From positions 9,858,001 to 9,922,000 of the forward strand of contig NW_026262637.1 in the NCBI RefSeq assembly GCF_021869535.1: 64,000 bases of DNA, in the 5' to 3' direction. The notes below the pieces were generated by a model that was not told the DNA's origin, searched no databases, and saw nothing but the letters and a program-made list of their open reading frames with translations. This DNA comes from Mytilus californianus. Its lineage: Eukaryota. The position numbers and the translations under genes were made by a program. Position 1 is the first letter of the stretch. The number at the start of each line of letters is the position of its first letter. Positions 17,499 to 41,879 of this stretch are shown here, one piece after another.

Positions 17499-17509
17499 AC
17501 TTTCGATTT
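17499..17509. promoter_or_regulatory. IRF-E-like motif upstream of RLR start
   Basis: ACTTTCGATTT (reverse AAATCGAAAGT), 29 bp before the proposed ATG. Confidence 0.4.
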
Positions 17510-17537
17510 AATGTTTTCTGAAAATTTTGTTTTAATC

Positions 17538-17562
17538 ATGGCGGCTCGGTCTCTGTTGTTTG
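17538..17562 (+). CDS. RLR exon 1 (MAARSLLF), probable start
   Basis: aatcATGGCG context; phase-1 donor G|gtaggt joins the phase-1 acceptor at 18599; IRF-like motif 30 bp upstream. Confidence 0.6.
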
Positions 17563-20500
17563 GTAGGTTGATTTTACATTTTAATGTCGTAATTTATCAA
17601 ATGTTGTACATATACACTTATTTCGACCTTCTTATTATCTTTAAGAATACAAATATTTGTTGTTAATTTATCAGTATTTACAAAGTAATTATTTCAACAT
17701 AATTTAGTTTATGTCAGACACTTTTGTCCATGATCTACGTATTAAATATATGTATATGTGTTATAGTTTATAGTTCGATCGGAGGATTATATAAGGTCAA
17801 TCTTCGTAAATTGACACAATAACTTTATTCCTAATTTGTTCAAAAGGGGCAACATGACATGAACAATTATAACACAATATGACATACACAAGATAAATGT
17901 ACATATGGTTTAATAAACAGGTTGATAAAAATATAAATAATAAGAACAATTTGACATTTGTCCATGCTCACTATTCATTTTTTTAAGAAATTGATGCTTG
18001 TAACATATTCTATTTGCTCAATTTTAACAGATGCATTTTTGTGGACGTCGCATGGCGACGTTTCCGTATGTTTTACTTTTTCCAGTGAATACTTCATCTG
18101 TTGATAATGATATATACTGTGAATGTTTTGTGTATATATTTAAATATATATTCCTATGTTGGAAGTTGCGCATGATAATGTCAAATCATAAAAATACAAT
18201 TTTTTTAGTCTCTAAGAAAACTTGTAAGATTTCCACAGCTAGTTTTGCTAAATAGGTGCAATTTGGTTACTCGGTGCAATTTGGGTACTGTGACGTTAGA
18301 TGTTCTCTCACCCAAACGTAACACAGAGGTATTGTCATCTTGTGTAATTGAACACTTTATGGGTCATTACAATTAAAATGGACTCAGTGCGTAGATACAA
18401 CTTGACGATGATTGCTTTTGTTTTGATCCGTCTTTAATCATATTGTTTTCTCTAGAACTTCATCCCATTTTATATATAAAATATAATATACACATAGAAC
18501 TACTACAATGTACTTATTATATGTTGTTTCCATAGATTTAGGGGTAAATTAGGGTTGAACACTTAGTATACTCTTACCCGAGTGTTTTTTTTTAACAGAC
18601 ATACTAGATGACGAGTTTCTTACTTTAGTAGCAACAAACATTGGAAATGAGTGGGACTCTTTGTTTATTAATCTCGGATTTAAAAGGAATAGACTGGATC
18701 ATTTTGCATATAAAAAGAACTCTTTATTGGAAACAGTACTAGATGGATTACATAATTGGAAGAAAAAACCATTAACAGACGAGCATTCAAAATCAACATG
18801 TATTAAGGAAATTCTTGACTTAGTTATAGAGGGATTACAAACAAATAAATGCAAGGGTATCGCTGATGAAATCCAGTCAACCGTCTCTAGCTCTGGTAAA
18901 ATATAAATACATGTACATTCACACTTTAGATTTTAACATGAAACAATTTAATTTAATAAGATTACAGATATTTATTCACGATGTGAAACACGTTGTTTTT
19001 AAAGTTTACGTAGGATGTTTAATTTTAAGTCCTGTGTGTGTTTGTATCAAAATATGAAATGTCCCGTTCATTATTAGTTTCAAGATCTTAGGTAGAAAAT
19101 GGTTTCAAACCTCAAAAGTTAAATTTTGAAATAAATGATCTCTGATAATTAATTCATCCGCATCAGTTATAAACCTACTAATTATTTGTAATCCTTTCTG
19201 CTCTAGATCATGGATCCATCCGCTTGTATTCAAGGCGGTTATCTGCATTTTCCTATATCATTTATTTCGACATGATTCCTTAATCATTTACAATTGGTGT
19301 GTACTACAATTATAGCCAATTATATACTCTTTAATATGGTAACAAGTAAGTATGTAGCCAACATTCTATTTATACAGTTAATAAAAACGATATTTCCTTT
19401 CATTAAGACATCAACCAAATCATTGATCTTCTCAGCGACCAATTAACAATGGATGAGAGACGTCTTGTGTTTAGTTCTCTTAAAATAACACATGAAAGTA
19501 TTCAAAGAGCATATACATCGAGCCAATCATTGAAGGCAGAAACAAAGGCTATACTGGATAATTGGTATAAAGACTTACATTTCAAATACTGGAAATGTCA
19601 AGAGCTTTTCACAGTGTTCAGAAACAGAGGCGAACTGTCTTCAATAAAGAATATCACAGAAAAGTATATGATTTCAGGTATATTTATGACAGACTTATAA
19701 CTTAGTATGCAAGTTGCTCATTTTGTCAATCTAAGAGTCACACGGGACACATTAAATAGTTTGGGGAAAAAGTCAATTGTTCCCTTAGATTAGAAAAGCA
19801 TGTGTATCGAAACAAATTAGGAACAGTCAATTTACAGAGAATGGCTGCATCAACGACCGGCGTGCTGACTACCGTGCTACTAATACTCTCTGCATGAAAC
19901 GTCCACTTACAATGGCATCGATCAAGTAGCTGTAAATGGTCGGACAGAACATAATAGAAATAAATTTAAAGAATATATATATAAAACATAATACGAATAA
20001 AACATTTTAACAAAAGTTAAAATTTGTATTACCGTAACATTGCTTTAATAGTCGCTAGCATAAATTATATCCGATAAAGAGTGAAAAAACCCAACGTACA
20101 AACATTTATTCACATGTACATGCACTCATCAATTTTTTACGAGATATTGTTCAAATATTTCAGGTCATGTACTTATGGTTGCCAATGACGATTGGATAAA
20201 AATATCTTTTAAACGAAAATATCATTTTTCAACTTATTTATTTATTTTCTTTTCTATCTAGTGAATTATTTACGTATTTGTTGATTTTTTGTTGATTGGT
20301 TTTAAATTAGATTAATTAAAAAACAATAAATGAAAAATCAACAAATTGATTAATTTATTTCATTATATGGAGGAATACCTTAATAATATACACTAGACAC
20401 ACCATTATGAAACACAAAATAATTTTTAATCATTAAGGTTGTATGTTTATATGCATATCATTAATCGACAGCAGTGAGAAGTATGTGTTACCCAATTGTC

Positions 20501-23500
20501 TAATATAAAAAAGAAGATGCGGTATGATTGCAAATGAGACAACTCGTCACAAGAGACCAAATGACACAGAAATTAACAACTATAGGTCACCGTAAGGCCT
20601 TCAACAATGCGCAAAGCCCATACCGCATAGTCAGATATAAAAGGCTCCGAAATGACAAATGTAAAACAATTCAAACGAGAAAACTAACGGCAAAATTTAT
20701 GTACAAAAAAAATTAACGAAAAACAAATATGTAACACATCAACAAACGACAACCACTGAATTACAGGCTCCTGACTTGGGACAGAAAAATACATACAGAA
20801 TGTGGCGGGGTTAAACATGTTAGCGGGATCCCAACCCTCCCCCTAACCCGGGACAGTGGTGTTACGGTACAAGAACGAACTGTAAAAATCAACTGAAAAA
20901 AGCTTAACTCATCAGATGGATACAAATAGAAATACATCTTACAAAAACACAGAGTGGAAGTGGTCGGGTACTTGTACATTCCAACAACAAAAAGACACTA
21001 AGTACAGATCTGAGAGTACTCGCAGTTACTGACAGCTAGTTAAAAGCCAATAACAAATAATAAAAAAAAAACTATTTTCAAGGACATTTAAAGGGTCAAA
21101 GAAGAAATTTTTGCATGAAAGTAGAGACTGAAAGAAAAACATAGTAATTAACAAAGCGACAAAAACACAGTTCTATCGATAATTGTAATATTTCAAAAAA
21201 AATATGCAAGTACATTTTAATTGTAGATGAATCAAATGACAACAGAGCAGAATCAACTGAGAACAGAGCAAAAGCAAGTAATCAAGGAGGGAATTCAGTA
21301 TTATCGGTCACTGAACAGAAAATTAATTCAAAGAAACGATTGATTGGTAAGTGTACGCATATCATAAACTTATATAATTATTTCATTTTTGTAGCAGAAA
21401 AGAACTTAAATAAAAAAAAGCAAATCAACCAAAAATATTTGCAACTTTTGTTCATCGAAAAGATTGCTTCCAAAAAAATACTGTTTTTACTGAGCTTTCA
21501 TTTAACATCAACCTTGTACAATACTAACGCAGTAAACCGCCAATGGTAAAACTAACATCAAAGTGTGAAGAGAGAGAGCCAACACCTTGGCCTATAGAAA
21601 GACAAAAAGACAAATTTGCGTACACACAACAATAAACAAACACTTTACAATATTACACAAAACGAATTCCATCATACATGGAGTGCAGCTCAGATATACG
21701 AAAGGGAAAATAATTTCTATTAAATAGTGACAACTGACACTGTAAATCCTGGAAGTGATTCAGTTAATTTGTTTTATATATTTTTGAAGGTAAAAAAAGT
21801 ATAAAAAAGCATTCATAAGAAACATGTAACCATAAGCTATAACTAATTTACAGACGAGACATCAGATGTTAAAGATTCAGGAGGTGAGATGAAAAAACCT
21901 AAACATGGCGATGATACAGGTAAGCATAGTTACAAAGTGGCAAAATACCTTTTTTCGTGACACATGCTCCGTTGTAATGTATGGGTTATTTTTTATAAAG
22001 AGATTGGATAACATGGATACAGGAAGTATTCAGATCACATCTTTATAAATTATAAGCTTAACAGCATGTATAAAACTATACGAAACGAATCAAATATTGG
22101 TCACAAGAAACAAAACCTTTACTTTTACATTGGTTTAAATTAGCTTTAATTTTTGTCATTAAATATAATCGTAAGTAAAACTTATTTTGTGTAAACTGGT
22201 CCAGCAACTTTTGAATTGCTAATATTCGTATTAGCTGAATCAGTCTATATCGGAACTTAATTTTAACGTTATGTAGCAAAATATGCAAGTACTACTACGA
22301 GTACTTAGTGTATTTTGTTGTTGTGGGAATGTATAAAAACCCTGCCACGTCCGGTCTGTGTATTTGTTAGATGTTTTTCTGCTTTGAATTCATCTGACGA
22401 GTTAAGCTCTTTTCAACAGATTTTTATAGTTTGTTCTTATATTGTAGTGTTACACAACTGCCCCAGGTTAGGGGGAGGGTTTGACGAAAATAAACTAGTT
22501 TAACCCAGCCACATCCTGTATGTGACTGTCCCAAGTCAGGAGCCTGTAATTCAGTGGTTATCGTCTGTTGCTGTATATCATATTTGTTTTTCGTTTGTTG
22601 CTCTGTGCATATAATAGGCCGTTATTTTTTTTTTAATTGTTTTACATTTGTCATTTCGGGGCCTGTCATAGCTGACTATGCGGTATGGGTTTTGCTTATT
22701 GACAAAGGCCGTATGGTGACCTATAGGTGTAAACCTCTATGTCATTTTTTCTCTTGTGAAGAGTTGTCTCATTGGCAATCATACCAAATCTTCTTATTTT
22801 TAATTTTGCTATATACTTTTAGTGAATTCTACAAATAGTGATGAAATAAAGTGAGTCACACAAATTGCCATCATGTCATTTATGTATTCTATTCAAACTG
22901 CCTTTGAATTGTAATTCGGCTTTGCTTGAATTAAAAACGCATGAGAATGGTTGCATATCTATTTTCTTCGGAACATGATTGTACCAAGTCAGGCATATGA
23001 CAGCAGATTAAGTCGAGCGTTTGGTTTTGTCAGGTTTAATGGACTTCCGCCTTTTTGTATTTGCATTGGAGTTCGATTGTTTTGTTAATGTAATTTTATT
23101 ATTATAGAAAAATAAATATTCCTAAAAATATAACAATATGATAATACATATTAATGTACGTTTTTGGTTTTGCTATTTTAGACGAATCAAAGGATAATAG
23201 ATTTCAACTTAGTGTTAAAGTTCATTCATTATTAACATCCACATCAGAACAAAAAGTTAATTCAAAACGATGCGCTGGTAAGTACAATAATTTTAAACAA
23301 ATACAATTCTTACAGACATGTAGACGAAAACAAAAGACCGGCGGCAAAAAAAAGGATATGCACAAAACCACAATAAGGCAACACAAACAAATCAAAATCA
23401 GTGTGATCTCAGATGCCTTAGAAGAGTGAGTAATAGAGATTTACAATAACTGTCGGACTCGGAGTCCTAGTACGAGTACGACTACAAATCATACAGGTAG

Positions 23501-26500
23501 GCTATAGGGGTGATCTCAAAATAATGAATACGCTAATTAGTTTTACCGTGTTCAATCTTTGTGAGGTAATAGGACAAAACCATCTATGAAATTAATTGAC
23601 TTTTTAACTGAGGGGTAGAAAGTGCGCTTTTTCGTTTTAAGCTCGCTTATAGATATGTGCAGAATTAAAAACCTTTCACAACAAAAATGTATTGCTTCAG
23701 TTATTTGATAATTTTGATCATTTACATTTAAAAAATGACATTTTTCAAGGGTAAAAAATTATCCTTTCATAACTGAGGAAATTATTTAAAAGGAAATTGG
23801 ATAATACTTTTGTTCAGATTTTTTTTAATAATTTTTTTTATTTTTTTTTAGGGGGGAGGGGGTGGGGGTTATTTGTTTCCACCGTATGTAGTCTTACGGA
23901 ATAAGATAAACATTTTCAATTGAATGATTGCTAATTTTATCATACCTTTTTGGGTTCGGAATATTTGATTTGTTTTTACTGCGAATGAATTGAAATGCAA
24001 TACTCCTGTTCGCATTGATTCTGTTGAGAATAAAAGAACGGAGTTCCAATGTCCCCTTCGTTGCACATATTTTATCTGGCCAAGGGCAATACCAAGTTTT
24101 TTTAAATACCTTGCAAGAATTGTACACGTGTGATCACTTGCAATGCAATTTTCTATAGAATTTTTATTTTCAAGAAACATATCATTTTTAAAAACAGTTG
24201 ATCAACACGGATTTTCGAAGTCATGGGAATTCCTGATAACAACCTTTGAAATAATTTTTATAAAATCTGGCAAATTGTACATACAGGTATTGAAAATGTT
24301 ATTTTTTTTTTTGGAATAGACATTAAGTTTTCTGTATTATTGTTTGACTGGTGCCACATGTCAAGCATTATCTGCTTACCTTTCCGGAGGACCTGATATC
24401 GTCCCTGGTTTTTGGTGAGGTTCGTGTTGCTCAGTTTTTAGTTTTCTGTGTTTCTTTTTGTATACTGTTTGTCTTTTTGTCTTTTTCGTTTTGTGCAATA
24501 GCATTGTCATTTTGTTTTCGACTTATGAGTTTGAATGTCCCTTTACTATCTTTTGCCTCTCTTTGACCTTAGTTCTTTTGTTTCTTTTTTCGGGGTTTTC
24601 TTTTCTTGAAGCTTCAAAATTTACAAGAGCATCATAAATATTATCTGCAATTCTGGTTGTAGCATTATCTGTGGATATTTCTTCAGCTTTCGCCGCAGCA
24701 TCGCCTGCATTTATATCTCCATTGTCAGGCCCATTATTCGTTTGTTTTTAATTTATGTTCCTCTACTGCTCCCACAGGAAAGGTGGTTCCTGACCATCGT
24801 CAAGAGAAAGGTGGTTAATTATTTCATCAGCAATACACGACATAAAGCCATAGTTCAAGTTTGTGATAGTCATTGATTTACCGAAACAACTTACAATTAA
24901 CACTATAATGATTAGAGTACAATGTTAACAATAATTTTATTATTTTGAGATCGCTCTTCGTCATTTAAACTGTATTACTGTAGCTCTGATCGTATTTGGA
25001 CTCATACACATATTGTAAATCTCTAATACCTATAAACAGTAATTTATAGGTGTTCAATTCGCATAAAGCTTTTATTTATTTCTATTCACACTAAGAAGTA
25101 TAAACGGATGGAATCACAACAACAGGAGTGAGACCAGATGCGTCAACTGGAAAAGCAACTCTTGCTATGCATGTATCACCTAATCCAGAAGTAATACACG
25201 GACCTGTTAATGTCAGAATGATTCATATCTTTTTTTAATCTATCGAAGGCGTTAATAAACTCAACATAGATACCAAGATTTAGATTGTAAATGCAGGACG
25301 CAGGATGAGACAAATGCATTAGTAAGAAACATAAAACTTAAAGTTAAAACTTATTTACAGACGAAATAGTAGATGTTGAGGATTCAGCGAGTAACAATAA
25401 AAAACCAAAACACGAAGAAGATACAGGTAAGCCAAGTTTTAATGTGCCAATCTGAGTTAGTTCTTATTTCATTTCTTGAAACATTTACTGCCTTATATTC
25501 TATTGTCATATTTTGATTAAATATATTGAATTAAAGAAGTATTCAAATCACGTCTTTGACAATCTTAGTCCTTACAACGGATATATATAATATAAAAAAT
25601 AAGAAGATGTGGTATGATTGCAAATGAGACAACTCTCCATAAGAGACCAACTGACACTAAAATTAACAACTATAGGTCACCGTACGGCCTTCAACAATTA
25701 GCAAAGCCCACAAAGCATAGTCAGCTACAAAAGTCCCCGAAATGACAAATGTAAAACAATTCAAACAAGAAAACTAACGGCCTAATTTATGTATAAAATA
25801 ATGAACGAAAAACAAATATGTTACACAGCAACAAACGACAACCACTGAATTACAGGCTCCTGACTTGGGACAGGCACATACAGAATGTGGCGGGGTTAAA
25901 CTCGTTTGAAGGCGCCTACCCTCCCCTAACCTGGGACAGTGGTGTAACAGTACAGCATAAAAATCAGTTGAAAAAGGCTTAACTCACCAGATGGATACAA
26001 ATAGAAATACATCTAACAACAAGAATGTGTCCATAGTATACGGATGCCCACTCGCACTATCATTTTCTATGTTCAGTGGACCGTAAAATTGGGGTCAAAA
26101 CTCTAATTTGGCATTAAAATTAGAAAGATCATATCATAGAGAACATGTGTACTAAGTCTCGGACGAACGGACGGACGAACGAACGGACGCACAGACCGAA
26201 AAACATAATGCCCCTAGGTGGGGCATAAAAACACAGAGTGGACGTGGACGGGTATTAATACATCCCCCACAACAAAATAACACTTAGTACAGATCTGAGA
26301 GTACTCGCAGTTACTGACAGTTACAGACAGCTAGTTCAAAGCCAATAACAACTAAGAAAAAAATCATGCATCTAAGACTAAAATATCAATCAGTACACAT
26401 CAGACATCCAATGAATTTAGTGTAAAGACGTCATAAACAGTCGGAAAAAACATGACATTGTGCAATGCCAAGATACAGGTATCGACAGATTGTAGAACCA

Positions 26501-29500
26501 TGAATGTGTATATGTATATATAAAAAAAATTTAGTTTGATTTTAATTTACTGATAACAAAATCAATATAAACAATATTCAAAGATCTAATTACAGTGTTG
26601 AATTGGTAACCTTTTAGGATAAGTTTATTTGAAAAATATAGATACTGGTAACAATAACTTGTGATATCAGCAAAATATTTCTGTAGTAATCAACAAACGC
26701 AAACCTTACACCGTTTTCGATTTCCTTAAATACAATGCATTTCTTCATTGAAGATAGTCTAATATTTTTTTTATAATCGGATAGTCGTCTAACTTATAAA
26801 TTTACCGAATATTTCCTATTCCCGATTGTGAAATTATGACTGAGTATTTATTTGCATAGCGGTAGATGCATTTATTGCCGGAAACTTTTACCATGGCGAC
26901 ACCCCCTTTCTTGGTCTCTAAAGAGTTCATGCGATCCCTCAGTTTTTGATTATTCCATTGATTTGTCCTAATCGATCTATGAGTTTAAACATCGGTAAAC
27001 TACTGTTGCCTATACATGTGTATTTACCTTATGTTGTATCAACGCAGTCAACAGCATTTTCAATGCTATTATCCGGATCTATTGAATCTTAATTAGAAAG
27101 TAGCTTTAAAGTTATACACCAAATTATGCAAAGTACTCTTTTCTTAAAGATTTTGGGTAATTCCACATTTATTCGTTAATCAACTATGAATAATTTCACA
27201 TTTGAACGTTTCTGTCTGTCTCATATATTGCCATCGTGTCGTTTATGTACTGTAATTTTCCTCAGTTTTAAGTTTCAAATTTTAAACGAACAAACCTTTT
27301 CGCGAGATTTTATTTTTGCATTTTTCCTGATCTGAATTCTGATCTTACTTTAAAACCAAATAGACGCATGGAAATACTTTACATTTGTGCTTTTATTTGA
27401 GTCACAACATTAGCAAAAATAATCTGCTCGCGAAATCACCTACCTTTCTGTATTCGTTTAATTTGAAACGTCGTTTGTTTAAATGACGATTTCATGAGCG
27501 TGTTCGCATTTTGCTATAACTTTGCTATCAAAATTATGTTCATCCGTCCAGAGCACTTGAGATCACCCTGGTTTTTGGTGAGTTTCGTGCTGTTCAGTCT
27601 TTAGCTTTCTGTGTTAAGTTTTGTGTACTGTTGTTTGTCTTTTCGTCGTTTTTCGTTTTTTTCCATGGCATTGTCATTTTGTTTTCGACTGGTTAGTTTG
27701 AACATCCCTTTGATATCTTTCTCTTTTACGGTATTGTAACAAAGAAAGACACAAGTTATACAGTACAGCCAACTTAACAGATTACTATATTTCTTGAAAT
27801 GATTGTCAAAGATTCTTTTCGCGAATAGATATTTAAAATGCAAGAACGCCAATCAAGTTTAGTTCATATTTTTAGTAAAAGGGGAACCAACTCAGAATAG
27901 TTACAGTGGACTTCGTAAATACCAAGAAGAGTTAGCAGAGAATGCACTTCAAGGGAAAAACACAATAATTTGTGCAGTGACGAATGCGGGAAAAACAATT
28001 GTCGCCTTCCATATAATCGATGAACATATGAGACGAAATCCAAATGGTATGACCCTTAAATTTATCACATTTGATATAATACATCATTTACTTGCACATC
28101 ATGATTTACATATTAAAAGTTCAATTTTAGATAGAGAAAGTCATTTACTGTTTGTACTGTGGGTTTGATAAAAACAATATCAGGTAATTACAATTTGATA
28201 ATGCAACTTCAAACTTTCACTGTACTATATTCACATGAATGAAATATTTGGTTTTTTCACTTTTCTAGCCAAGGTTGTATTTATGGCAAGAACCAATCCT
28301 TTGTTAGATCAACAATACAAAAAAGCATGCGACATCCTGAAGTATTTGCAGGTATATTTGATAACCATATTTTAATTGAAATGCTCCAATGAATAACATC
28401 CTTTGTACTATGGAAAACATGATACTGATAAGACATGTTAGAGGATCATTTACATTTAGACCTACGACATCTATGAAATTACAAATATGTATGGAGAAAA
28501 ATCAAAACCTCATGGAAGTTTCTTCATCTTTGCAGTTGCCTAAATAAATTGAAAACCCATAGCATAAAACATCGTGTTAAATGGTAGTTTCTTATGACAA
28601 TATAAAGAGATTCGGTTTCTACATCAATTACACAGTTATCAAACAACACCAATTACGAAAAGGAATTTAGAGGTCAGCACGACAATAAAAGCCAGGTGTC
28701 TATCCAAAATGTCGAGCTTCAAATCACTCTGAATCTTAATTTTGTACATATAAATGTATGATACCTTCATGAAGGTCTCTCACCATACACAATAACTGTC
28801 GAATTTAGCTATTAAGACATAAATGTATATTCAGTGCTAAATCTTAATGTTGAAGAAAATGTTTCAAATATGATTCAAATTGCGACTTAGGAACATATGT
28901 AACAAAAATTCCAGTTTGAATATTATTAATAATAATTAAGGAAGGTTTTACTCATTTATCATTTGGGGCAATATTCCTAATGCACCTCAAATTGAGGTAC
29001 TCAAATATAGTTTGGTAATATCTGTGCAGTGATATTGGAAAAGTTTCCTATATTTAACAAATGACTGAGCTTAACTATTTGTGCTGACTTGAAGAGCAGA
29101 TGATCATAGAAAAAAAGAATTAAAATTAAATGTTTGCAAAGGACTGAATTTTTAAGGATCTTATTGTATGAAAAAGGGATCTTTTACCTCGAGAAGACGC
29201 ATCACAAAGGGCTGTTAGGGGTATGCTAAATTACTGGAAATTTGATCTCATTTTGTATCCCGAAAATTTACCACATACGGGAACACATCTCATCTTTGAA
29301 ACAAGCCATCATACATATTCAAAATATGATATGGGCAGAGGATTTAACAAAAAATGCTACCATTTCTGCCTACCTTAAATGAATTGCACATATTAACCAA
29401 ATTGAATGATTACTCAAAGGAAATGTCTATGAACTCTATTTCCTCGCACCTTATAATTCGAAAATCAAAAGGTGAAAAAAGCTATTATAAATCGTCAGAT

Positions 29501-32500
29501 GATCTTTTAAGATATTAGTCTGACTGGTCTCAGGATTTACATTTCTACATATTTGTATTACAAACTTCATATGATAATGTTTATATTCAACACAAATGCA
29601 AGAAAATTGTTCTAATACGCTGTAGATTGGGCTAATTGCAAAAGATATAAATACCATGTAGGCATTTATATCTTCTGTGCGACTTTTCTTTCAGGAATCT
29701 AACGACATTAAACAATTTCTAGTCGGACAAGAAAGCACAGATGAGTCTGCACGACTGCAGTTCGACAAAGGTCGTCTATTCTTTATGACGCCTCAATTGT
29801 TAATGAATAAAATGAAATTAGAGGAGAAGTTTCCTGTGCCTATAGATACATTTTCCATGCTAGTTTTGGATGAATGCCACCATGTACATGGGAAAACACC
29901 ATATAACGATATAATGGCAACTTATCGGAAAGCAAAACATGATGCAAAGGAAATGAAATTGCCGCAGGTATGCATACGATGTTAGTTTGTCATCTTATAA
30001 GTTTGAATATCCCTTTGGTATCTTCTGCCTCTCTATTAAAAGTATTAAATTATTTCTCTTTTTTCTTATTAAATCCGTCCGGAGCACCTCATGATCATAT
30101 CATTCCCTGTTTAAATTGGGGTTCATGTCTCTGAGTCTTTAATTTTCTGTTTATTGTTCGGTGAAATTGTTTGTCTTTGCGTCGTTTTTTCGTTTTTTAC
30201 TATGGCGTGGTCAGTTTCATTCCTTCTTCTGAATTTTTCTCTTTGTTATCTTCCGCCTCCTAATTTATATCTGTGTAAATACTTAAATAACTTCGAAATT
30301 TGCAATTGTTTATCTCTTTTTATCAAATAGTTATGTCCTTTCAATATTTAGTTCAATTCTATTCATGCTTCATTTCAGATAGTAGGTTTAACGGCCTCTC
30401 CAGGAACAAACAAAGCTAAAGATGAGTTTTCAGCAAAGGAACACTTGATGAAGGTCATGACACAAATGGATGTAGTACATTTGTCTACCGTTCGTAAGCA
30501 TAAAGATAATCTTCAAGAATATACCTCTGAGCCGGAACAAGGTAAACAAACGTTTATTTCCCTTTCGATCAGCATTTCCCATGATTCATGTATACATTGT
30601 GACTTCTCATAAAGAAAATGTGATCTTAGTAATTATTGATCTATACCACATGCCATATTTTGCATAAATTATTTCTATTAGAACGCTGATTTTGTGGACA
30701 TTGTTTTTTCAGTTGTATTACCGATGAAAATCAGAACACGAGATCCAATACGACGTAGATTAGAGTTATCAATATCCTATGTTGAAGAATTGTTTCAGTC
30801 TGAAAAGGGTTAGTATTGATTCCATTGAATACATATTAAAACATTGTTGTGACGTCATTCTGTTGTTGTATCCGTTCTTTATTTCAGTGATTGGACTATC
30901 ATTTACCTGTAAGACAATAAAGTCTCTAGTTCGGACAGTGTGTTACTTGCCATTTTTTGTATACCCTTTCCAAATTTATTTCTTCGTGCTTTATGCCTCG
31001 ATCAAATAGCAAGTAGGGGGATGACTTTTCACTGTAAAAAAATTGGGTCATGAATTTTAAAGTAAAGTAGTGATTTGGTCTAGCTGAAAAGGTTAAAAAT
31101 AGTATTTCGGAAGCTGTCAAAAGAATTCAAGACCCCCTTAAGATAAAATTGTCCATATTTTGAGTAAGAGCTGATGAAGTTTTCTATAATTTTGCATATA
31201 TGTCTAGAAATGTGTCCCAAAAGAAGTACACAACACTGTAAAAATATTAATGATAAAGCGCAGGTGGAATTTTTTTAATTTTCATTTATTGTCTAAAAGA
31301 AATGCATTACGAAATAACTGTGTTCTCGGGCCTAAGAGATGAAATCCGTAAATATAGAACCTGTACTTTGGCAACTTATCTGAATAATTTAATAGTGGCA
31401 AATTGTCAAATAGCATAAAACTAAAGGATTTAAACTTTTATTTGATAGAAATTCTGCAAAAATGTCCCATTTTGGCATTATATGGTCAAAATAAGCATTT
31501 CAAAGCCTTTTCAATTTTTATGCATAAGTGGCATTCTGACTTTCTATCTGACAGGTTTTCATGTGTCATTATTTGTGTTTCCAGGCTTTAATCAAGTTGT
31601 ATTATTCATTTGTGAACTCTGAATCTAGAGAAAAGTAGATTATCACAGACAAAATGTGCATAATGTGTTGTGTGAATGGTCCTTGTCTAACGGCCTGTTT
31701 GAAGAAAGTAAAATGTGAGGAGCTTGGTACATAAAAGTTGAAGTCCATAATGAAGGTTTCACTAAATTTGTATAAAAAGCACTTTACAATGTCTTGTGTA
31801 CCTGTTTCGTTTCACATACTATCTTTCTTTTCTTCTGTAGGATAGCAAGTGGTTCAAATATATGCCTGTTGAGACTAAAATTGCATGCAAGTTTTTCACT
31901 GAAAAGTGAAAAATCTTTGTATCAGACCATACTGTCTGCAAAAAAAGTTGAATGCAAGAGTCCTTTTGTACTCAGACTTCTTGTATCATGTCACTTGAGC
32001 AAAGAAATGAGCAAAAAGAAACAAGTTTTCTATTTCCTATAGCTTCAGTATGCATTTTTAAATGTAAACATGTGCTACGACCTAAATCGACCCTAAATTA
32101 TTTTCAGTCTTTCTTGGCCTAAGACCATTTTATACTCATATGATATGCTATTTGTAATTTTTCTTTCCATTTAAAGTACATTAAATACATATGGAAGGAT
32201 TATTTATAACAAAAAAACTTCACAAATTTAAAATTGCTTGAAAAAATTACATCTTCATGGAAGGCCCCCCTTCATTCGAAAACCTCTATTTTCAGGTACA
32301 GGTTCACATAAAATTGACTTTTGAATAATTGTAATAAATCTTATACATTAAATGAGTATTCTATTGCTGTTAATACATGATATATTAAATATAAGGGCAT
32401 TTAAAAAGTACTTTTTTGCAACATTTGAATTTTTAAAGCACAAAATGTTGATAGTTGGCATGGAATTCTTCAATTTTTACGTCAAAATTTAACACGCAAA

Positions 32501-35500: not shown

Positions 35501-38500
35501 AGAGGGGGCCTGCGTCATACTGGAAAATTGTGAATAATCTTTTTTCATGTATAGTGGGTGAATAGGTCTGATCGATTTCTTGATCTCCGAACATTTCATG
35601 GCAATAAATTTAGATATTATATATAAAAAGAAGATATGATAAGATTGCCAATGAGACAAATCTCCACAATATACCAAATGACACAGAAATTAACAAATAT
35701 AGGTCACCGTACGGCCTTCAACAATGAGCAAAGCCCATACCGCATAGTCAGCTATAAAAGGCCCCGAAATGACAAATGTAAAACAATTAAAACGAGAAAA
35801 CTAACGGCCTAATATATGTACAAAATAATATAACTATAACAATTCATTTTTTATGAATAAAAGATATAATATTTTGATCATAATTCTCTTTTAATTCTGA
35901 AATAATATAAGATGGGGGAATTCCGATGAACAACAAAAGAATTTAAATTGATTGCACGCTTGTAATCTCTTCATATGTGCTCATTCATTATATCTTATAG
36001 TGTTGTTGAAATAAAATAGACTGAGGTGCACTCGATATGGTTGAACCTTTTTCTGCAACGTGAACCTGTCTTCAAGTTGTATGTGCTTTTCTTTTTTGTT
36101 CTTCTCATTCACCTAATAACCTAATAAGTATAAAATCTCAAAAGGAATAGGAGAGGACTACATTGTAAAGCTGCTATAACTTTATCCTCTTTGTTGTCCG
36201 CACTGAAATCGGATATAACTGAATACACATTTGATTGTAATCCAAAGTTTTAAACAACACAGTTACTATATACAACATCACTTTCTTCTTTTTCTTTGCA
36301 TTAAGAATATTTTTTCCATTTTGAGACACCAAACGCATGTGAAGGTTTTCACGGAAAATATTAACGTAGTCCTAGCGCACGCAAAAAGCATGATACACAT
36401 GCACTGTGTCTTCATGTACATGTAGCTATACATGTTGTTTACCTTCAACATTCAAATTTCAACGTTATAATACTAAGAACCCTTATTACTATATACTCGA
36501 AAATTAACAGGCTTATATACTTTTTTTAATTTAAGATTGTTATTGCTAAATTTGTAATGTCTCTTATTCAAATCTTATTAAGAAAATCATAATAGTTTGG
36601 CTTCTCCCGTAAATTATGGTTTTGTTGACGTGAAAATTAAGCATATCAGTATATTATTGATTTTCAGTTCAGCAGTTCCTGGATATCAAAATGCAAGACA
36701 TACATGACGTGAAACAAAGCCTACAAAACCCTCCTATTCAAAAATTAGAGCAAACATACGTTCAGTGGATAACAGAAACTAGACTGAAGGTGGAAAATGT
36801 TTTGAAAAAAGATGAATATGTTCCAAGACTGCTGTTGACATACTTACGTCATTTAGAAGTAAGTAGTCTGTATATCTCATTTGGTTTTCGCTGTGTATCA
36901 CCGCCACTTTCTGTATGTGCTTGTTCTACTTCATTTGGTCCCTGGTAGAGAGCTGCCTCATGGGCAATCATTCTAATTCTTTCTATTTCTATATTGCTGT
37001 CTGAAAGTTAAAAAAAAAACATTGATGATTCCTACTGTTAACAAGGTGTCAGAAGAGATACGTCGATTTTTTTTTTCTTCTTCTGTCTTTCGTACTTTGT
37101 ACGTACATTTTTGTAATGTTGCATCTTTACTCTGAATGCACATTGACAATTTTAACCATGATAGAAAGGAATAAATCATGGAAACGGACAACAACCAAGG
37201 CAATCGTTGATACGAGACATTTGAAAAAAAAATACTCTATAACTACAAAACAAAAAATTAAGAAATTCAACAGGATTAATAATTGGGAGAATCATCGTTC
37301 CTTCGAGTTAATGGTGGGAAGTATGGACAAATTGGAGATACATATGCTCCCACTGAAACTTAATTGAAATTCAATTTGTTATCATTGCAACTAGAAAATT
37401 TTATAAAATACTGTCCATTTTTAAATGTTGTAGCCAACTGAAGTCAAATTAAGAAGGAATGAAATGAACAAGTCTCTAACAATGTACAACTTCATTTATG
37501 GACGACTACATTTAATTACCTCCAGAGGAAATCTTTGATCCTTATCGGCTAATTTCCAATTGTGAACGTTTTACTGCAACAAAAAAGAGAAAAATGATTC
37601 AATGGGTCATTCGAAATGTACAAGTCCAATAAAAACACCATGGTGAAAAATAAAAATATTTCGATGAAAGGACAAATAACAATTAACAACATCATATAAA
37701 AACTTAAAACTAAGCAACAAGAACTCCTCGCAAAGGCAGAGTTGAACTGCTGCGTTGTGGTATGCAGTTCATGTTCCACATTGAACACCCGTCATAAAGC
37801 TGAAACAAGTAGAAATTCGATACAAGTCAAGTTTCGTAATGTAACAATTAAGAAAAGTGGTCAGGGTTGTGGTTATGACAAGTGGAACCTATCTGTAGTG
37901 ATACAGATTTTCCATAACAGTCAACCAAACTATGGTGGCGTCAAACATCTTTTGAAGGGCTTACTACAACTTTTCAACTTAAAACCCTTGATGCAACAGC
38001 TTCATTATAAGCAATGCAATGACCCTCAATCAATACAATCGTGAAAGGAAACGCAAGCACTGGAAAATTGTATCAAAGGATGGATACAATATTCCGTATG
38101 CCGGTGTAGCTGGGATGTTGCTATACAGAAATTTTATATGTTTTGATAAAACACCGAAATACGCATTTAAAGTGTACATCACGAGTTGGTTGAGCGTTAT
38201 TGAATATCCGTTTCACAGATGATAGCGGATATGTTCCAAATGTCGTAACTACAATCCCGTCCCCCTTTTTACCGAATATGACCTACCGAATTTGACTTAT
38301 TACCGGGTTTGTACTAACATGAGCAACACGACGGGTGCCACATGTGGAGCAGGATCTGCTTACCCTTCCGGAGCACCTGAGATCAACCCCAGTTTTTTGT
38401 GGGGTTCGTGTTGCTCAGTCTTTAGTTTTCTATGTTGTGTTTTGTGTACTACTGTTTGTCTGTTGGTCTTTTTCTTTTTTAGCCATGGTGTTGTCAGTTT

Positions 38501-41500
38501 ATTTTCGACTTATGAGTTTGAATGTTCCTCTGGTATCTCTCTTTTAATTACATTTGTCGTACAACGATTGCTTCATTGATAAAAATATGTTATATATGTT
38601 TTCTTAGATATATGCAGAATGTCTGGAAATGAATTCACTTCTTGACACACACGCAGTTGTGGACTTGATAACCAGAAAGTCGTCACAGGAATCAATTCAA
38701 AGTAAAAATGCCAATACAATAGAAGAACAAGAAATTTCGAAATATCTAGACGGTGAGTTTATTCCCGGGACATCCAGTGTTATATCAGCTTTTATCCATG
38801 ACAAACATAAAATTAATTATGACATATTATCTCCTAACAAACTTATGACACTGAAAATCTTTGCAAAAGAACGATGTTTTCTATAATATTAAACACAGAC
38901 AGTATGTCAAAATTAATAATTAGATATAGGCAAAAACATAATTCACAATTACAAACCAATAACTGTTACAGTATATAGAACTTCTAACCAGACTAATCTT
39001 ATCTTCCACATGTTCAACACTTCATTGGAAGATAAGATTAGTCTGGTTAAATGAGGCATAATAGTATATCGAAATACTAAACTAAATCATGACCCACAGC
39101 ATTAATTCATAGCAATTTACTGATCTAGTATTACAAGGCATATCAATATTGCTACAAATGTACTGGTTAGTTTTCATTTCGATGATCAAGGAACGCTTTT
39201 GACAACTCTAGTCCAAGAGGTTGACAACTATTCATGAAAAAATGTATTTCAGATGTATGCGCAAACATGAGTTCTCTTAATCCTGAGGAAGTCGAAGAAA
39301 ATCCAGATGTACAGAAAATTATCCATCTTCTACAGACTGAATATGAGAAACAGGGAGACAACTCTAGGTTTTTAATTTTTGTGAAGACGAGAGCTACTGC
39401 CATGTTACTTGCCAAACGACTTGAAAACATGAAAAATCTCAACTGTCAATACTTCACTGGGTCACAGGTTGGACTAGAGGACGGAGGTGAATATGTTCAT
39501 AACCATTAATCAAAATAACTGTTTATTCGATGAATATTCTTTTTCTTTATGGGATCAATAATAACAACAAAGGAGAACATGCATTTTTAATTTAGGCTAA
39601 TTTGAATCTGCAAAATCACCGAAAATAAAAAAAATTGTATGATTTTGAAATATATATAATATTTTAATAGATTAATCATAAAACTAGATACTGACCCACT
39701 GCACCAATTAATGACGAATTTACTGATCTAGTATTCTACGGAATGCCTATATTGCTGTTTGTTTTAATTTACCTTGAAGTTCGTTATTATTGTTATACTT
39801 TTTTACGGTATGAAAAATTCGAAGAAGACTGAGTCTTAAACAAATCTAATTATATATTTGATATATTGTGTATTTGAAAACATTTTGTATTCTTAAATCA
39901 AGGACGCCATAAAGCCTTGACGTCATGTCCCCGCACGTATATCTTCCCACAACGTGTTATAAAAAAGAAAAACTCGGAATTGCATTATCCTAATAGGATC
40001 AAACAAACAGAGTTTTTAAATATGAAGCAAAAGTATATGTCTGCAGATATTAGCAGTATGCCGAATTCATGCAACGCATCCGTTATTACAAAATAAGCCC
40101 AGTGACGGTAGCTGGTCCTCGACCAGTATAATTATAATATTTTATATTTAAGGTTCAATTTTACCCGAAGGCATACATGTTTCTGGAGAAAATAATATAC
40201 CTTTGTTTTCGTCGTTTTTAAGAAGATTTATTGATTGGGTGTGTGGTGTTTGACCTAACTTTTGATAACCCTTTTTATGTTAAAAGAATATTTTAACCCT
40301 TTTTTTGAATGCATATACATTTTGTTCACGTATTATCATTCTTTATTTTAATGTTTGATTTGATTTACTTATTTCAATTCATTCTGTTTTCGTAAGGTCT
40401 TACCAAACATAAACAACTGGAAGTGTTAAATAACTTTAAATCTGGTGTGCACAAGTGTATTGTGGCGACTTCAGTAGCCAGCGAAGGAATTGATATACCT
40501 GAATGTAACATGACGATAAGATACCGATTTACGGCAAATGAAATTACAAGTTGCCAAATGAGAGGTTTGTAAATAGCTTTAAAGTATGAATTGTATTCTT
40601 ACAATAAAGATAACCATTAAAAATATATTTTATTTGGCCTTTTTTATTTTTTTATTTTAAAACATATATTAACAGGCGTAAATCTGTTGGGATATACCAA
40701 CCAATGCAAACAACAAACAAGTCTTAGGTAAACAAACATACGCCTACCGTACTAAACTATAAATCTGTAATATTTGTTGAGTTTTATAATATTATCGATA
40801 TATTATATCTAATCTGATGAGTCTTATGTAGACAAAACGCTCGTCTGGCGTACAAACTACAAGCCAGGTATCGTTGATGAGTTTTTATACTTCAACTGAA
40901 ATTCATACGGACCAGCTGTAGCTACTTCCTGTCATGCGGACTGGTCATACGGACCAGTTGTAGCTACTTCGTGTCATACGGAATGGTCATATGGACCAGC
41001 TGTAGCTACTTCCTGTCATGCTGACTGGCCATACAGAACCAGCTATATTGACTGTTTTGATTATTTAATAAAAGTGTTACGAACTTGCTGATTCTATATT
41101 GGACCTGTATTGATTGTCGGTCAGCTGTATTGGCCCTCGGGACCAATACAGTAGACATTGAATCAATACATGGACCAATACAGAATCAGCAAGTTAGTAA
41201 CACTACAATATTATTAACCTAAATTCTTAGTTAAATTTAACACTTTAATGGATTTTCAGGTAGAATTAGAACAGCTGGTGGAAAGGAGTTTATCATAGGA
41301 TCCGAAAAAGAAAATTTACGTGAAACCATTAACATAGAGAGGATGGTGTTGATGAAAAAGGCAGTGAATGCTGTCATAGCAATGACCGAGCATGAAGTTA
41401 GAGAAAAGATAAATAGAGGTGAACAACTTCTCTTTCAATCTGAAGACGTTGAACGGAAGAAAGCGCTTGAAACAAGGAAACATAAAGTTGTTGCACAATT

Positions 41501-41879
41501 CAAAGTAAACTGTAGAAAATGTTCAAAAGAAATTGTTGACGGTCATAATTTACGAATACTTAAAAGTTCACTCCACGTCGTGTTTGATAATTCTATCTAT
41601 GGACGTATTACACGCAAGCCAATAACACACGTTGTAACTGAAGACATAAAACTGACTGATAAAGTCTCTGGTGAATGTGGACATGAATGGGGACATATAA
41701 ACCTGTACAATGACTGTGAATTAGTTGTCTTGGCTCAGAAGCATATCAAAGTATATAATGTGGCAAAACAAGGATTTATAAATATTAAGAAATGGAAGGA
41801 TGTTCCATATAAGATTGAAACAGTGGATGATGATGACATACTTGCTTTCAGAGCTAGTCAGCTTCCGACACCAGAATGA
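17538..41879 (+). CDS. RIG-I-like receptor (DExH-box dsRNA helicase) with two N-terminal Death-like domains; 17 coding exons, about 1027 aa
   Basis: Hand-assembled exons with GT-AG ends and matching phases: 17538-17562, 18599-18895, 19408-19677, 21227-21346, 21854-21919, 23182-23277, 25361-25426, 27876-28046, 28269-28351, 29695-29967, 30379-30541, 30713-30808, 36668-36858, 38608-38752, 39253-39486, 40397-40564, 41260-41879. The summed length is 3084 nt with no internal stop. Motifs: LRKYQEELA (Q), AVTNAGKT (I), [15 protein letters not shown] (Ia), DECH (II), GLTASP (III), FLIFVKTR (IV), [11 protein letters not shown] (V), QMRGRIR (VI), CTD CRKC...CGHEWG...KKW. Exon 1 is the least certain. Confidence 0.9.
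18599..18895 (+). CDS. RLR exon 2: Death domain 1
   Basis: tttaacag| acceptor and |gtaaaa donor, phase 1-1. [36 protein letters not shown]...[14 protein letters not shown]...[11 protein letters not shown]...GIADEI fits the Death-fold pattern (IG.EW..L...LG; L..W). Confidence 0.85.
19408..19677 (+). CDS. RLR exon 3: second, more divergent Death-like domain
   Basis: cattaag| acceptor and |gtatat donor, phase 1-1. [36 protein letters not shown]...[15 protein letters not shown]...ELFTVF has the same length and L..W spacing as exon 2. Confidence 0.7.
20510..21055 (+). repeat. Abundant interspersed repeat (family 1), near full-length copy in RLR intron 3
   Basis: gatgtggtatgattgccaatgagacaact...ggccttcaacaatgagcaaagccc...gaattacaggctcctgacttgggacagg; partial copies at about 978-1150, 3545-3620, 35625-35825, 47530-48000. 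Confidence 0.85.
21227..21346 (+). CDS. RLR exon 4, linker module A1
   Basis: ttgtag|...|gtaagt, 120 nt, phase 1-1; [40 protein letters not shown]. Confidence 0.75.
21854..21919 (+). CDS. RLR exon 5, linker module B1
   Basis: tttacag|...|gtaagc, 66 nt, phase 1-1; [22 protein letters not shown]. Confidence 0.75.
22330..22800 (-). repeat. Family-1 repeat, reverse orientation, RLR intron 5
   Basis: Reverse complement of the 20510-21055 copy; similar minus copies at about 34490-34625, 45390-45490, 55160-55520. Confidence 0.85.
23182..23277 (+). CDS. RLR exon 6, linker module A2 (paralogue of exon 4)
   Basis: ttttag|...|gtaagt, 96 nt, phase 1-1; [32 protein letters not shown]. Confidence 0.75.
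25361..25426 (+). CDS. RLR exon 7, linker module B2 (paralogue of exon 5)
   Basis: tttacag|...|gtaagc, 66 nt, phase 1-1; [22 protein letters not shown]. Confidence 0.75.
25600..26430 (+). repeat. Family-1 repeat interrupted by a nested insertion, RLR intron 7
   Basis: Collinear with 20510-21055 except for an extra segment at about 26018-26228. Confidence 0.8.
26018..26228 (+). mobile_element. Non-autonomous Helentron/HINE (DINE-1/pearl)-like element
   Basis: Starts aacaagaatgtgtcc, has a (GACG/GAAC)n microsatellite and a 3' palindrome gcccctaggtggggc followed by an A-run; inserted into an A-rich site. Confidence 0.6.
27876..30808 (+). CDS. RLR exons 8-12: helicase domain 1 (motifs Q, I, Ia, II, III) and start of Hel2i
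   Basis: Exons 27876-28046, 28269-28351, 29695-29967, 30379-30541 and 30713-30808 give [46 protein letters not shown] and IVGLTASPG in RIG-I order. Confidence 0.92.
30934..33071 (+). repeat. Two direct copies of an about 400-bp element (30934-31331 and 32682-33071) in RLR intron 12
   Basis: ggacagtgt...ataccctttccaaattt...gaaataactgtgttctcgggcc present twice with high identity. Confidence 0.85.
33275..33635 (+). mobile_element. About 360-bp non-autonomous element ending in a long hairpin; second copy at about 61965-62330
   Basis: cttcatgtcaaaatg...gattttgattggtt start; terminal arms tctgagagggtgatagagcagattgttacccc / ggggtaacaatctgctctatcaccctctcag. Confidence 0.75.
33700..34900. mobile_element. 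Element with degenerate internal tandem repeats of about 150-160 bp (Helentron/MITE-like)
   Basis: Recurring gatagagaaactt...aaattgatcagcaagac..gatctacaa...gacccctta units; terminal gatgagcgacacatgctctttggagcctctagtt. Confidence 0.5.
36668..40564 (+). CDS. RLR exons 13-16: Hel2i and helicase domain 2
   Basis: Exons 36668-36858 (EQTYVQW), 38608-38752 (IYAECLEMN), 39253-39486 (ENPDVQKI...[13 protein letters not shown]...FTGS) and 40397-40564 ([11 protein letters not shown]...[15 protein letters not shown]...QMR). Confidence 0.9.
38985..39049. repeat. Perfect 24-bp inverted repeat with 17-nt spacer, RLR intron 14
   Basis: taaccagactaatcttatcttcca / tggaagataagattagtctggtta. Confidence 0.9.
40903..41044. 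repeat. 42-bp minisatellite, about 3.3 copies, RLR intron 16
   Basis: tcatacggaccagctgtagctacttcctgtcatgcggactgg repeated. Confidence 0.85.
41073..41204. mobile_element. About 130-bp palindromic miniature element, RLR intron 16
   Basis: agtgttacgaacttgctgattctatattgg / ccaatacagaatcagcaagttagtaacact arms; central tattggccctcgggaccaata hairpin. Confidence 0.7.
41260..41879 (+). CDS. RLR exon 17: motif VI, pincer and RIG-I-type C-terminal RNA-binding domain
   Basis: gattttcag| acceptor; GRIR completes motif VI; FKVNCRKC...HVVFD...[11 protein letters not shown]...[11 protein letters not shown]; stop TGA at 41877-41879; overlaps supplied ORF 41343-41879. Confidence 0.92.

What the first reader, a model, noticed from the sequence alone, without database searches (positions are those of the whole stretch)
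18599..41879. RIG-I-like dsRNA sensor with tandem Death domains in place of CARDs
Seen: two phase 1-1 exons (99 and 90 codons) splice in frame ahead of a complete RLR helicase and CTD. The first has a clear Death-domain signature ([17 protein letters not shown]...LHNW); the second is a divergent copy of the pattern. No CARD-like exon was found. Established: vertebrate RLRs signal through 2xCARD to MAVS, Death domains pair homotypically with adaptors such as MyD88, IRAK, FADD and RIPK1, and some invertebrate RLRs are reported with swapped N-terminal domains. Inference: this sensor may bypass MAVS and couple dsRNA detection directly to a Death-domain adaptor. A tandem DD-DD plus repeat-linker version may be undescribed.
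Basis: partly seen in the sequence, partly recalled or inferred. Interest (0 to 1): 0.85.

Follow-up and report, generated by a model that had tools for sequence, protein, structure and literature searches.

The report
Mussel RNA sensor with two death domains

Summary
Exons 2 (18599-18895) and 3 (19408-19677) are phase 1-1. With exon 1 (17511-17562) and 14 further exons they give a 1036-aa protein identical to RefSeq XP_052088244.1, "DHX58-like", of Mytilus californianus.

Both N-terminal exons classify as Death domains, not CARD, DED or PYD. The first is clear. The second is borderline by Pfam and rests on its predicted fold and on an orthologue that passes the threshold. No CARD exon was found in the window.

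Spliced RNA contigs from three runs of one study join exons 1 to 6. They run 200-756 nt past exon 6, which by length reaches the helicase exons. The helicase motifs and the C-terminal domain are intact.

Orthologues with both death domains are annotated in M. trossulus, M. galloprovincialis and M. edulis.

RLRs with Death, DED, caspase, Ig or SAM heads in lophotrochozoans are published (PMC8998645). That survey's M. coruscus orthologue, McoRLR1, is a truncated model without the death domains. I found no paper describing the tandem version.

"Bypasses MAVS" is untested. Oyster MAVS itself carries a Death domain (PMC5557890).

Verdict: a real gene and a modest new variant of a known kind. Function is inferred.

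The parts
17511..17562 (+). Exon 1: start codon and 17 codons plus 1 base ([17 protein letters not shown]). A second in-frame Met at 17538 matches the M. trossulus start (MAAR...).
   Evidence: CDS including this exon translates exactly to P0021. RNA joint 17561>18598 seen in run X2.
18599..18895 (+). Exon 2: death domain 1 (DD1), phase 1-1, 99 codons.
   Evidence: Pfam Death 23.4 bits. Profile against PDB: PIDD 3e-12, RIPK1, FADD, RAIDD and ankyrin death domains, with no CARD, DED or PYD. AF2 pLDDT 74.6; the top 36 Foldseek matches are all death domains.
19408..19677 (+). Exon 3: death domain 2 (DD2), phase 1-1, 90 codons, directly abutting DD1.
   Evidence: Pfam Death 22.4 bits, just under the gathering score of 22.6. 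The orthologous exon on L004 scores 27.4 bits. AF2 gives a six-helix bundle at pLDDT 75.7. VIA-align Z is 7.6-9.0 for 18 death domains, against at most 7.3 for CARD, 6.9 for PYD and 6.0 for DED. The nearest ESM Atlas clusters are all Death.
21227..21346 (+). Exon 4: linker unit A1 (40 aa, acidic/Ser/Lys-rich).
   Evidence: RNA joints 19675>21225 and 21345>21853.
21854..21919 (+). Exon 5: linker unit B1 (22 aa, [22 protein letters not shown]). Skipped in one RNA contig.
   Evidence: Joint 21345>23181 in run X3 skips it.
23182..23277 (+). Exon 6: linker unit A2 (32 aa), related to exon 4.
   Evidence: RNA joint 21917>23180.
25361..25426 (+). Exon 7: linker unit B2 (22 aa, [22 protein letters not shown]), 73% DNA identity to exon 5.
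27876..30808 (+). Exons 8-12 (27876-28046, 28269-28351, 29695-29967, 30379-30541, 30713-30808): Hel1 with motifs Q, I (GKT), II (DECH) and III (TAS).
36668..40564 (+). Exons 13-16 (36668-36858, 38608-38752, 39253-39486, 40397-40564): Hel2i insertion and Hel2 up to motif VI (QMRGR).
   Evidence: RIG-I_C 29.1 bits, Helicase_C 63.8 bits.
41260..41879 (+). Exon 17: pincer and C-terminal RNA-recognition domain, including the stop codon.
   Evidence: RIG-I_C-RD 61.5 bits. Aligns to the duck RIG-I C-terminal domain.

Best explanation
This is a functional, low-expressed Mytilus-lineage RIG-I-like receptor. A tandem death-domain module ('2DD') sits where RIG-I and MDA5 carry 2CARD, and a roughly 116-aa disordered linker built from a duplicated two-exon unit tethers it to the helicase.

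Shown: the gene structure, the domain identities, the splicing, the intact ATPase motifs and C-terminal domain, conservation across Mytilus species, and purifying selection on DD2, the helicase and the C-terminal domain.

Inferred, by analogy with RIG-I/MDA5 and with death-domain assemblies such as the Myddosome, PIDDosome and Fas-FADD: the helicase and C-terminal domain bind viral double-stranded RNA. RNA-driven release or clustering of the 2DD modules then nucleates a helical death-domain oligomer. That oligomer recruits a death-domain adaptor and switches on NF-kB/IRF-type transcription or caspase-dependent cell death.

The partner is unknown. A bivalve MAVS-like protein with its own Death domain is at least as likely as MyD88, IRAK or FADD.
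For: - Gene model: exact identity to XP_052088244.1, and all 16 introns are GT-AG.
- RNA: spliced contigs in runs X1-X3 join exons 1-2-3-4-5-6. They continue 364, 200 and 756 nt past exon 6; 756 nt equals the summed length of exons 7-11.
- DD1 is Death subfamily.
- DD2 is Death subfamily.
- RLR core: closest solved structures are duck RIG-I at 4e-68, LGP2 at 2e-64 and MDA5 at 1e-58.
- Orthologues with both death domains exist in four Mytilus species. The DD1+DD2 exon pair is also found on two further contigs, L003 and L004.
- dN/dS against M. trossulus: helicase 0.25, C-terminal domain 0.31, DD2 0.34, linker 0.49, DD1 0.83.
- Published frame for Death-headed RLRs: PMC8998645.
Against: - There is no functional datum on RNA binding, oligomerisation or partners.
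- DD2 is just under Pfam's gathering score, and both AF2 models have only moderate confidence from shallow alignments.
- DD1 evolves almost neutrally (dN/dS 0.83 over 98 codons, a single pairwise estimate). This could mean relaxed constraint rather than an arms race.
I did not see it read by read.
- Expression is low: contig depth is 5-7, and a 6% sample of the raw RNA run X9 had no reads on the exons.
- The fourth zinc-binding cysteine of the RIG-I C-terminal domain has no aligned counterpart.
Confidence: 0.6

Rival explanations
1. MAVS-independent wiring. The 2DD recruits MyD88/IRAK, or FADD/caspase-8 or a RIPK-like protein, directly. dsRNA sensing would then feed the Toll/NF-kB or apoptosis machinery without MAVS.
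For: - No CARD anywhere in the protein or the window.
- The DD1 profile is closest to PIDD, RIPK1, FADD and RAIDD death domains.
- The mussel genome has very many death-domain proteins.
- PMC8998645 raises the same idea.
Against: - Sequence similarity between death domains does not predict partners.
- MyD88 and IRAK death domains are not among the sequence hits at E<=1, and MyD88 (3mop chain A) ranks only 39th-42nd by structure for DD2.
- Oyster MAVS has a Death domain that could accept a death-domain RLR (PMC5557890).
Confidence: 0.25
2. Regulator rather than signaller. The protein would act like LGP2, modulating or sequestering RNA or other RLRs. The death domains would serve autoinhibition or localisation, or would act as a decoy that caps death-domain assemblies.
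For: - RefSeq names it DHX58-like, and LGP2 is nearly as close as RIG-I.
- DD1 has dN/dS 0.83.
- Expression is low.
Against: - Both death domains are kept intact in at least four species and on two more contigs.
- DD2 is under purifying selection at 0.34.
- A tandem head on a long flexible linker mirrors the signalling-competent RIG-I/MDA5 layout.
Confidence: 0.12
3. Annotation artefact. The death-domain exons would belong to a separate upstream gene and be fused to the helicase only by gene prediction.
For: The M. coruscus model McoRLR1 lacks the death domains.
Against: - RNA contigs join exons 1-6 in frame and continue 200-756 nt further, while exon 7 accounts for only 66 nt.
- The reading frame is open across all phase-matched junctions.
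- The same architecture was predicted independently in four species by two different pipelines.
- McoRLR1 starts inside the linker and mis-splices exons 8/9, which is typical of a truncated model.
Confidence: 0.03

Closest known systems
Death-headed ('A1-type') RLRs of lophotrochozoans and the sponge Amphimedon (Int J Mol Sci 2022;23:3415, PMC8998645), for example the scallop MyeRLR2/3
   Same: N-terminal Death domain in place of CARD, on a DEXDc-HELICc-RD core. The head is acquired on separate symmetric exons, the process the paper calls 'domain grafting'.
   Different: - This protein has two non-identical death domains in tandem plus a duplicated two-exon linker.
- In the helicase-region search, the only proteins carrying a Death domain were Mytilus orthologues. 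The closest paralogues, at 40-44% identity, carry Ig or SAM heads.
- That survey's M. coruscus orthologue (McoRLR1, CAC5370894.1) is a truncated model without death domains.
Vertebrate RIG-I and MDA5 (2CARD-helicase-CTD)
   Same: Overall layout: a tandem death-fold head, a flexible linker, then Hel1-Hel2i-Hel2, pincer and C-terminal domain. The best solved match is duck RIG-I at 4e-68. The ATPase motifs are intact.
   Different: - The head is Death subfamily, not CARD.
- The linker is about 116 aa and repetitive.
- One zinc-binding cysteine of the C-terminal domain is not aligned.
- The partner is unknown.
LGP2 / DHX58 (the RefSeq name given to this protein)
   Same: Helicase and C-terminal domain similarity is close to that with RIG-I: 2e-64.
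   Different: LGP2 has no N-terminal signalling domain. This protein has about 320 aa ahead of the helicase, including two death domains.
Oyster RIG-I/MAVS pathway (CgRIG-I-1 and CgMAVS; Sci Rep 2017;7:8217, PMC5557890)
   Same: A bivalve RLR pathway. CgMAVS carries a Death domain, which offers a possible docking site for a death-domain RLR.
   Different: CgRIG-I-1 uses CARDs to bind MAVS. No death-domain RLR has been tested against MAVS.
Lingula RLRs with DED or caspase heads, and TRADD-N-RLR fusions in cnidarians and brachiopods (PMC8998645; eLife 2021;10:e70394, PMC8195603)
   Same: The same evolutionary theme: the RLR sensor core is recombined with different death-pathway adaptor heads in marine invertebrates.
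   Different: A different adaptor domain family and different lineages.

Membership tests
RIG-I-like receptor family | SF2 DExD/H helicase core with motifs I, II (DECH), III and VI | tested here: met
   DEAD 74.9 bits, ResIII 70.4 bits and Helicase_C 63.8 bits. GKT, DECH, TAS and QMRGR are seen in the spliced protein.
RIG-I-like receptor family | Hel2i insertion domain specific to RLR/Dicer-type helicases | tested here: met
   PF18119 RIG-I_C scores 29.1 bits against a gathering score of 23.2. A full-length alignment to RIG-I, LGP2 and MDA5 structures was obtained.
RIG-I-like receptor family | C-terminal RNA-recognition domain (RIG-I_C-RD) | tested here: met
   PF11648 scores 59-61 bits against a gathering score of 25.6.
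RIG-I-like receptor family | Four zinc ligands in the C-terminal domain | tested here: inconclusive
   The CxxC pair and one later Cys align to duck RIG-I. The fourth Cys falls in an alignment gap, and a nearby His might substitute.
RIG-I/MDA5 type (2CARD RLR) | Two N-terminal CARDs | tested here: not met
   No CARD hit in the protein at E<=1, in the exons, or in the window by tblastn with 13 CARD-RLR N-termini.
Death domain (Pfam PF00531), DD1 | Sequence profile match above the curated threshold, and a six-helix death fold | tested here: met
   23.4 bits against a gathering score of 22.6. PDB profile hits are only Death-subfamily domains, down to 3e-12. The AF2 model has TM 0.65-0.75 to FADD, PIDD and ankyrin death domains.
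Death domain (Pfam PF00531), DD2 | Sequence profile match above the curated threshold, and a six-helix death fold | tested here: inconclusive
   Sequence criterion: 22.4 bits here, just under the gathering score of 22.6. The orthologue on L004 scores 27.4 bits, and all three Mytilus copies hit only Death. Fold criterion: six helices, with VIA Z 7.6-9.0 for death domains and 7.3 or less for CARD. Taken together I read it as a Death domain, but this copy alone does not pass the curated cut-off.
Death domain | Homotypic oligomerisation with other death domains | not testable with these tools
   Needs biochemistry or multimer modelling.
Death-headed ('A1-type') lophotrochozoan RLR (PMC8998645) | Death + DEXDc + HELICc + RD on one polypeptide | tested here: met
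   for the domains. for RNA joining the death-domain exons onward. for the definition.

The most novel reading that the evidence does not exclude
The tandem death-domain head is a true functional analogue of 2CARD. On dsRNA it would seed a death-domain filament or 'RLR-ddosome' that plugs viral-RNA sensing straight into a non-MAVS death-domain adaptor (MyD88/IRAK or FADD/caspase-8). This would happen in an animal without interferon. The fast-evolving DD1 would be the interface contested by viral antagonists. The conserved D-x-x-D/S motifs in the linker would let caspases cut the head off.
Probability: 0.2. Interest if true: 0.65.

Novelty: new variant of a known kind. Interest (0 to 1): 0.42.

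Why it matters
Molluscs lack interferon yet mount antiviral responses, and how their expanded RLR families signal is largely unknown. A sensor that keeps the RIG-I/MDA5 layout but swaps 2CARD for two death domains offers a clean natural experiment. It asks whether death-fold heads are interchangeable nucleators, and which adaptor (MAVS's own Death domain, MyD88/IRAK or FADD) receives the signal.

The practical result is smaller. The gene is already annotated. Its second death domain and repeat linker are under-described, and the published M. coruscus orthologue model is truncated.

Tried and rejected
- **CARD, DED or PYD identity of the two exons.** Rejected. There are no such Pfam hits, and these domains rank below Death domains by structure.
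- **DD2 as a recent duplicate of DD1.** Rejected. hhalign gives E 0.055-0.12. A DD2 profile finds nothing significant among DD1's bivalve relatives or in PDB by sequence.
- **A hidden CARD exon in the window.** None found.
- **A third copy of the 22-aa linker exon, as in M. trossulus isoform X1.** None found in this window.
- **A transcript contig encoding the exact full-length protein.** Only the genome record carries it.
- **Raw RNA run X9.** No reads on the exons in the 6% of the run that was sampled, so it is uninformative.
- **Direct look-ups of P0002 and P0020 loci.** Not on record; P0019 worked.
- **Earlier scan notes by words.** Nothing on MAVS.
- **Supplements of PMC8998645.** They give accessions but not per-gene domain calls.
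- **Two literature searches for tandem death-domain RLRs.** No paper found.
Full report
**What is in the sequence**

The window is AT-rich eukaryotic DNA with GC about 0.32 and no N runs. Exon 2 is 18599-18895 (297 nt). Exon 3 is 19408-19677 (270 nt). Both are phase 1-1 with AG/GT borders.

I used a full-length orthologue found by searching exon 2 against 1.84 billion proteins (P0002, M. trossulus) as a guide. tblastn then laid out a colinear series of exons. Refining these to splice sites gave 16 exons from 18599 to 41879, all GT-AG, with one open frame. Adding exon 1 (17511-17562), the CDS translates exactly to P0021. That is RefSeq XP_052088244.1, [quoted passage not shown], 1036 aa. The window therefore comes from the California mussel assembly GCA_021869535.1, contig JAKFGE010000015.1, near 9.87-9.90 Mb.

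**Are the two N-terminal exons death domains?**

*DD1 (exon 2).*
- It passes Pfam Death at 23.4 bits against a gathering score of 22.6.
- A 17-sequence profile of it and its relatives hits only Death-subfamily chains in PDB. These include PIDD (3e-12), RIPK1 (2e-11), THOC1, FADD, RAIDD, ankyrin, TNFR1, p75NTR, Fas and TRADD. There is no CARD, DED or PYD at E<=1.
- Its AF2 model (pLDDT 74.6) has death domains as its first 36 Foldseek matches, at TM 0.65-0.75. CARDs appear only from rank 37.

*DD2 (exon 3).* This one is more divergent.
- It scores 22.4 bits for Pfam Death, a hair under threshold, over nearly the whole model (positions 2-83 of 86). No other death-fold family appears even at E<=10, and the same holds for the two orthologues.
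- The orthologous exon on a metagenome scaffold (L004, 41% identical) scores 27.4 bits.
- The whole protein gives Death at 33.4 bits in two stretches.
- AF2 predicts a six-helix bundle at pLDDT 75.7.
- The top 22 Foldseek matches are death domains.
- VIA-align gives Z 7.6-9.0 for 18 death domains, against at most 7.3 for CARD, 6.9 for PYD and 6.0 for DED.
- Protein-language-model neighbours are all Death clusters.

DD2 has no significant similarity to DD1. It has no sequence hit in PDB either. I therefore read it as a second, distinct death domain and not as a recent copy of the first. The alignments behind both models are shallow, so the subfamily call for DD2 is probable, not certain.

**No CARD**

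The protein has none. tblastn with the first 260 residues of 13 CARD-bearing RLRs finds nothing in the 64 kb except helicase motif I.

**The linker**

Between DD2 and the helicase lie four phase 1-1 exons totalling 116 aa, rich in D, E, K, S and N. They form two copies of a two-exon unit.
- Exons 4 and 6 are related to each other (A units).
- Exons 5 and 7 are 22-aa B units with 73% DNA identity to each other.
- The same arrangement occurs in the other Mytilus species, and M. trossulus isoform X1 has a third B unit.
- Each B unit carries a D-[VD]-x-D-S motif: DVKD/S and DVED/S here, DVQD/S in M. trossulus and M. galloprovincialis, and DDQD/S in the extra M. trossulus unit. I note that this resembles a caspase DxxD site. 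That is only an observation.

**The sensor core**

Pfam finds DEAD/ResIII, the RLR-type insertion domain, Helicase_C and RIG-I_C-RD. Motifs GKT, DECH, TAS and QMRGR are intact. Against solved structures the region aligns end to end with duck RIG-I (4e-68), LGP2 (2e-64), human RIG-I (1e-63) and MDA5 (1e-58). In that alignment the CxxC pair and one later cysteine of the zinc site align, but the fourth cysteine does not.

**Transcription and splicing**

Four small contig sets of one study hold about the exonic share of the query's words. I laid three of them (X1-X3), plus one raw RNA run, on 17450-23449.

The contigs are spliced, so they are RNA-derived. They show these joints:

| Joint | Runs |
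|---|---|
| 17561>18598 | X2 |
| 18894>19407 | X1, X2, X3 |
| 19675>21225 | X2, X3 |
| 21345>21853 | X1, X2 |
| 21917>23180 | X1, X2 |
| 21345>23181 (in-frame variant skipping exon 5) | X3 |

All are GT..AG. One 1231-nt contig runs from exon 1 through exon 6 and then 364 nt further. Another contig continues 756 nt past exon 6, which equals the summed length of exons 7-11 (66+171+83+273+163). Exon 7 is only 66 nt, so these contigs must extend into further exons.

Depth is low (5-7). The raw RNA run gave no exon reads in the 6% of it that was sampled.

**Relatives**

The death-domain region finds full-length matches only in Mytilus: M. trossulus X1 and X2, M. galloprovincialis and M. californianus. 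The M. galloprovincialis cluster also holds M. edulis XP_071136622.1, and these proteins show Death in two stretches.

The DD1 exon followed 500-640 bp later by the DD2 exon is also present on two further contigs. One is a Logan contig (68% and 67% identity). The other is a marine metagenome scaffold (42% and 41% identity).

The helicase region's next relatives are Mytilus RLRs with Ig or SAM heads at 40-44% identity. CARD-bearing RLRs of other molluscs and vertebrates follow at about 30%.

A Nei-Gojobori comparison with M. trossulus gives these dN/dS values:

| Region | dN/dS |
|---|---|
| Helicase | 0.25 |
| C-terminal domain | 0.31 |
| DD2 | 0.34 |
| Linker | 0.49 |
| DD1 | 0.83 |

The core and DD2 are constrained. 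DD1 evolves fast. These are single pairwise estimates on short regions.

**What is already known**

A 2022 survey of 58 metazoan genomes describes lophotrochozoan RLRs with Death, DED, caspase, Ig and SAM heads. It names the Death type 'A1', which is also found in the sponge Amphimedon. It attributes the heads to exon-level 'domain grafting', and it raises signalling through death-domain partners (PMC8998645). It lists Death, CARD, CARD-CARD, IG, DED and SAM heads, but no Death-Death.

Its McoRLR1 (CAC5370894.1) is the M. coruscus orthologue of this gene. That model starts inside the linker, mis-splices exons 8/9 and has no death domain. The tandem head of this Mytilus gene therefore escaped that survey. 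Two further literature searches found no description of a tandem-death-domain RLR.

[quoted passage not shown] This undercuts the inference that a death-domain head implies bypass of MAVS.

Earlier notes of this scan report many other death-domain genes in this genome, including tandem death-domain genes. I did not test those notes.

**Mechanism**

Shown: an intact, spliced, conserved RLR with two Death-type domains and no CARD.

Inferred: dsRNA binding by the helicase and C-terminal domain, followed by RNA-dependent clustering of the 2DD head, nucleation of a helical death-domain assembly, and recruitment of a death-domain adaptor. I put about 0.6 on this general scheme. Within the rival readings, I put 0.25 on a partner other than MAVS, 0.12 on a mainly regulatory or decoy role, and 0.03 on a gene-model artefact.

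**Verdict**

The gene is annotated in RefSeq and the class is published. The tandem death domains and the repeat linker make it a modest new variant whose function is untested.

Noticed in passing
window 50552-52927 (+): A 792-aa single-exon ORF with leucine-rich repeats and a C-terminal TIR domain (TIR_2 66 bits, LRR_8 65 bits). It is a Toll-like receptor gene about 9 kb downstream of the RLR.
   Followed up: partly
window 57441-57917 (-): A 159-aa ORF matching the TNF ligand family (PF00229, 52.9 bits). Together with the RLR and the TLR, it makes three innate-immunity genes within 40 kb.
   Followed up: partly
window 21854-21919 and 25361-25426 (+): Each 22-aa linker repeat carries a D-[VD]-x-D-S motif (DVKD/S and DVED/S here; DVQD/S and DDQD/S in the M. 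trossulus and M. galloprovincialis orthologues). It looks like a caspase DxxD cleavage site next to a KKPKH basic patch. Cleavage there would detach the death-domain head from the helicase. This is untested.
   Followed up: partly
window 21345>23181 joint: One RNA contig (run X3) skips exon 5 in frame. M. trossulus isoforms X1 and X2 also differ by one 22-aa cassette. Linker length seems to vary by alternative splicing of phase 1-1 exons.
   Followed up: partly
window 18763 and 21285: The RNA contigs differ from the assembly by an A>G at 18763, which by my own codon reading turns a Lys into a Glu (K55E of the exon 2 peptide) in DD1. They also carry a 3-nt deletion at 21285 in linker exon 4. 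These are probably allelic variants.
   Followed up: no
window 12303-16715 (+): Long ORFs that look like a decayed retroelement lie just upstream of the RLR's first exon. They gave no Pfam hit at E<=0.01 for the two pieces tried.
   Followed up: partly
window 20450-21050 and 22250-22850: Two intronic stretches have very high RNA-contig depth (thousands) and many variant letters. They behave like copies of abundant, transcribed repeats and not like parts of this gene.
   Followed up: no
window 42281-42384: A 52-nt unit repeated twice at 100% identity and containing an internal palindrome lies about 400 bp after the stop codon. Another note of this scan covers it.
   Followed up: no
P0119 (M. 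coruscus CAC5370894.1): The public M. coruscus model used as McoRLR1 in PMC8998645 appears truncated at the 5' end and mis-spliced around helicase motif I, when compared with the M. californianus protein.
   Followed up: yes
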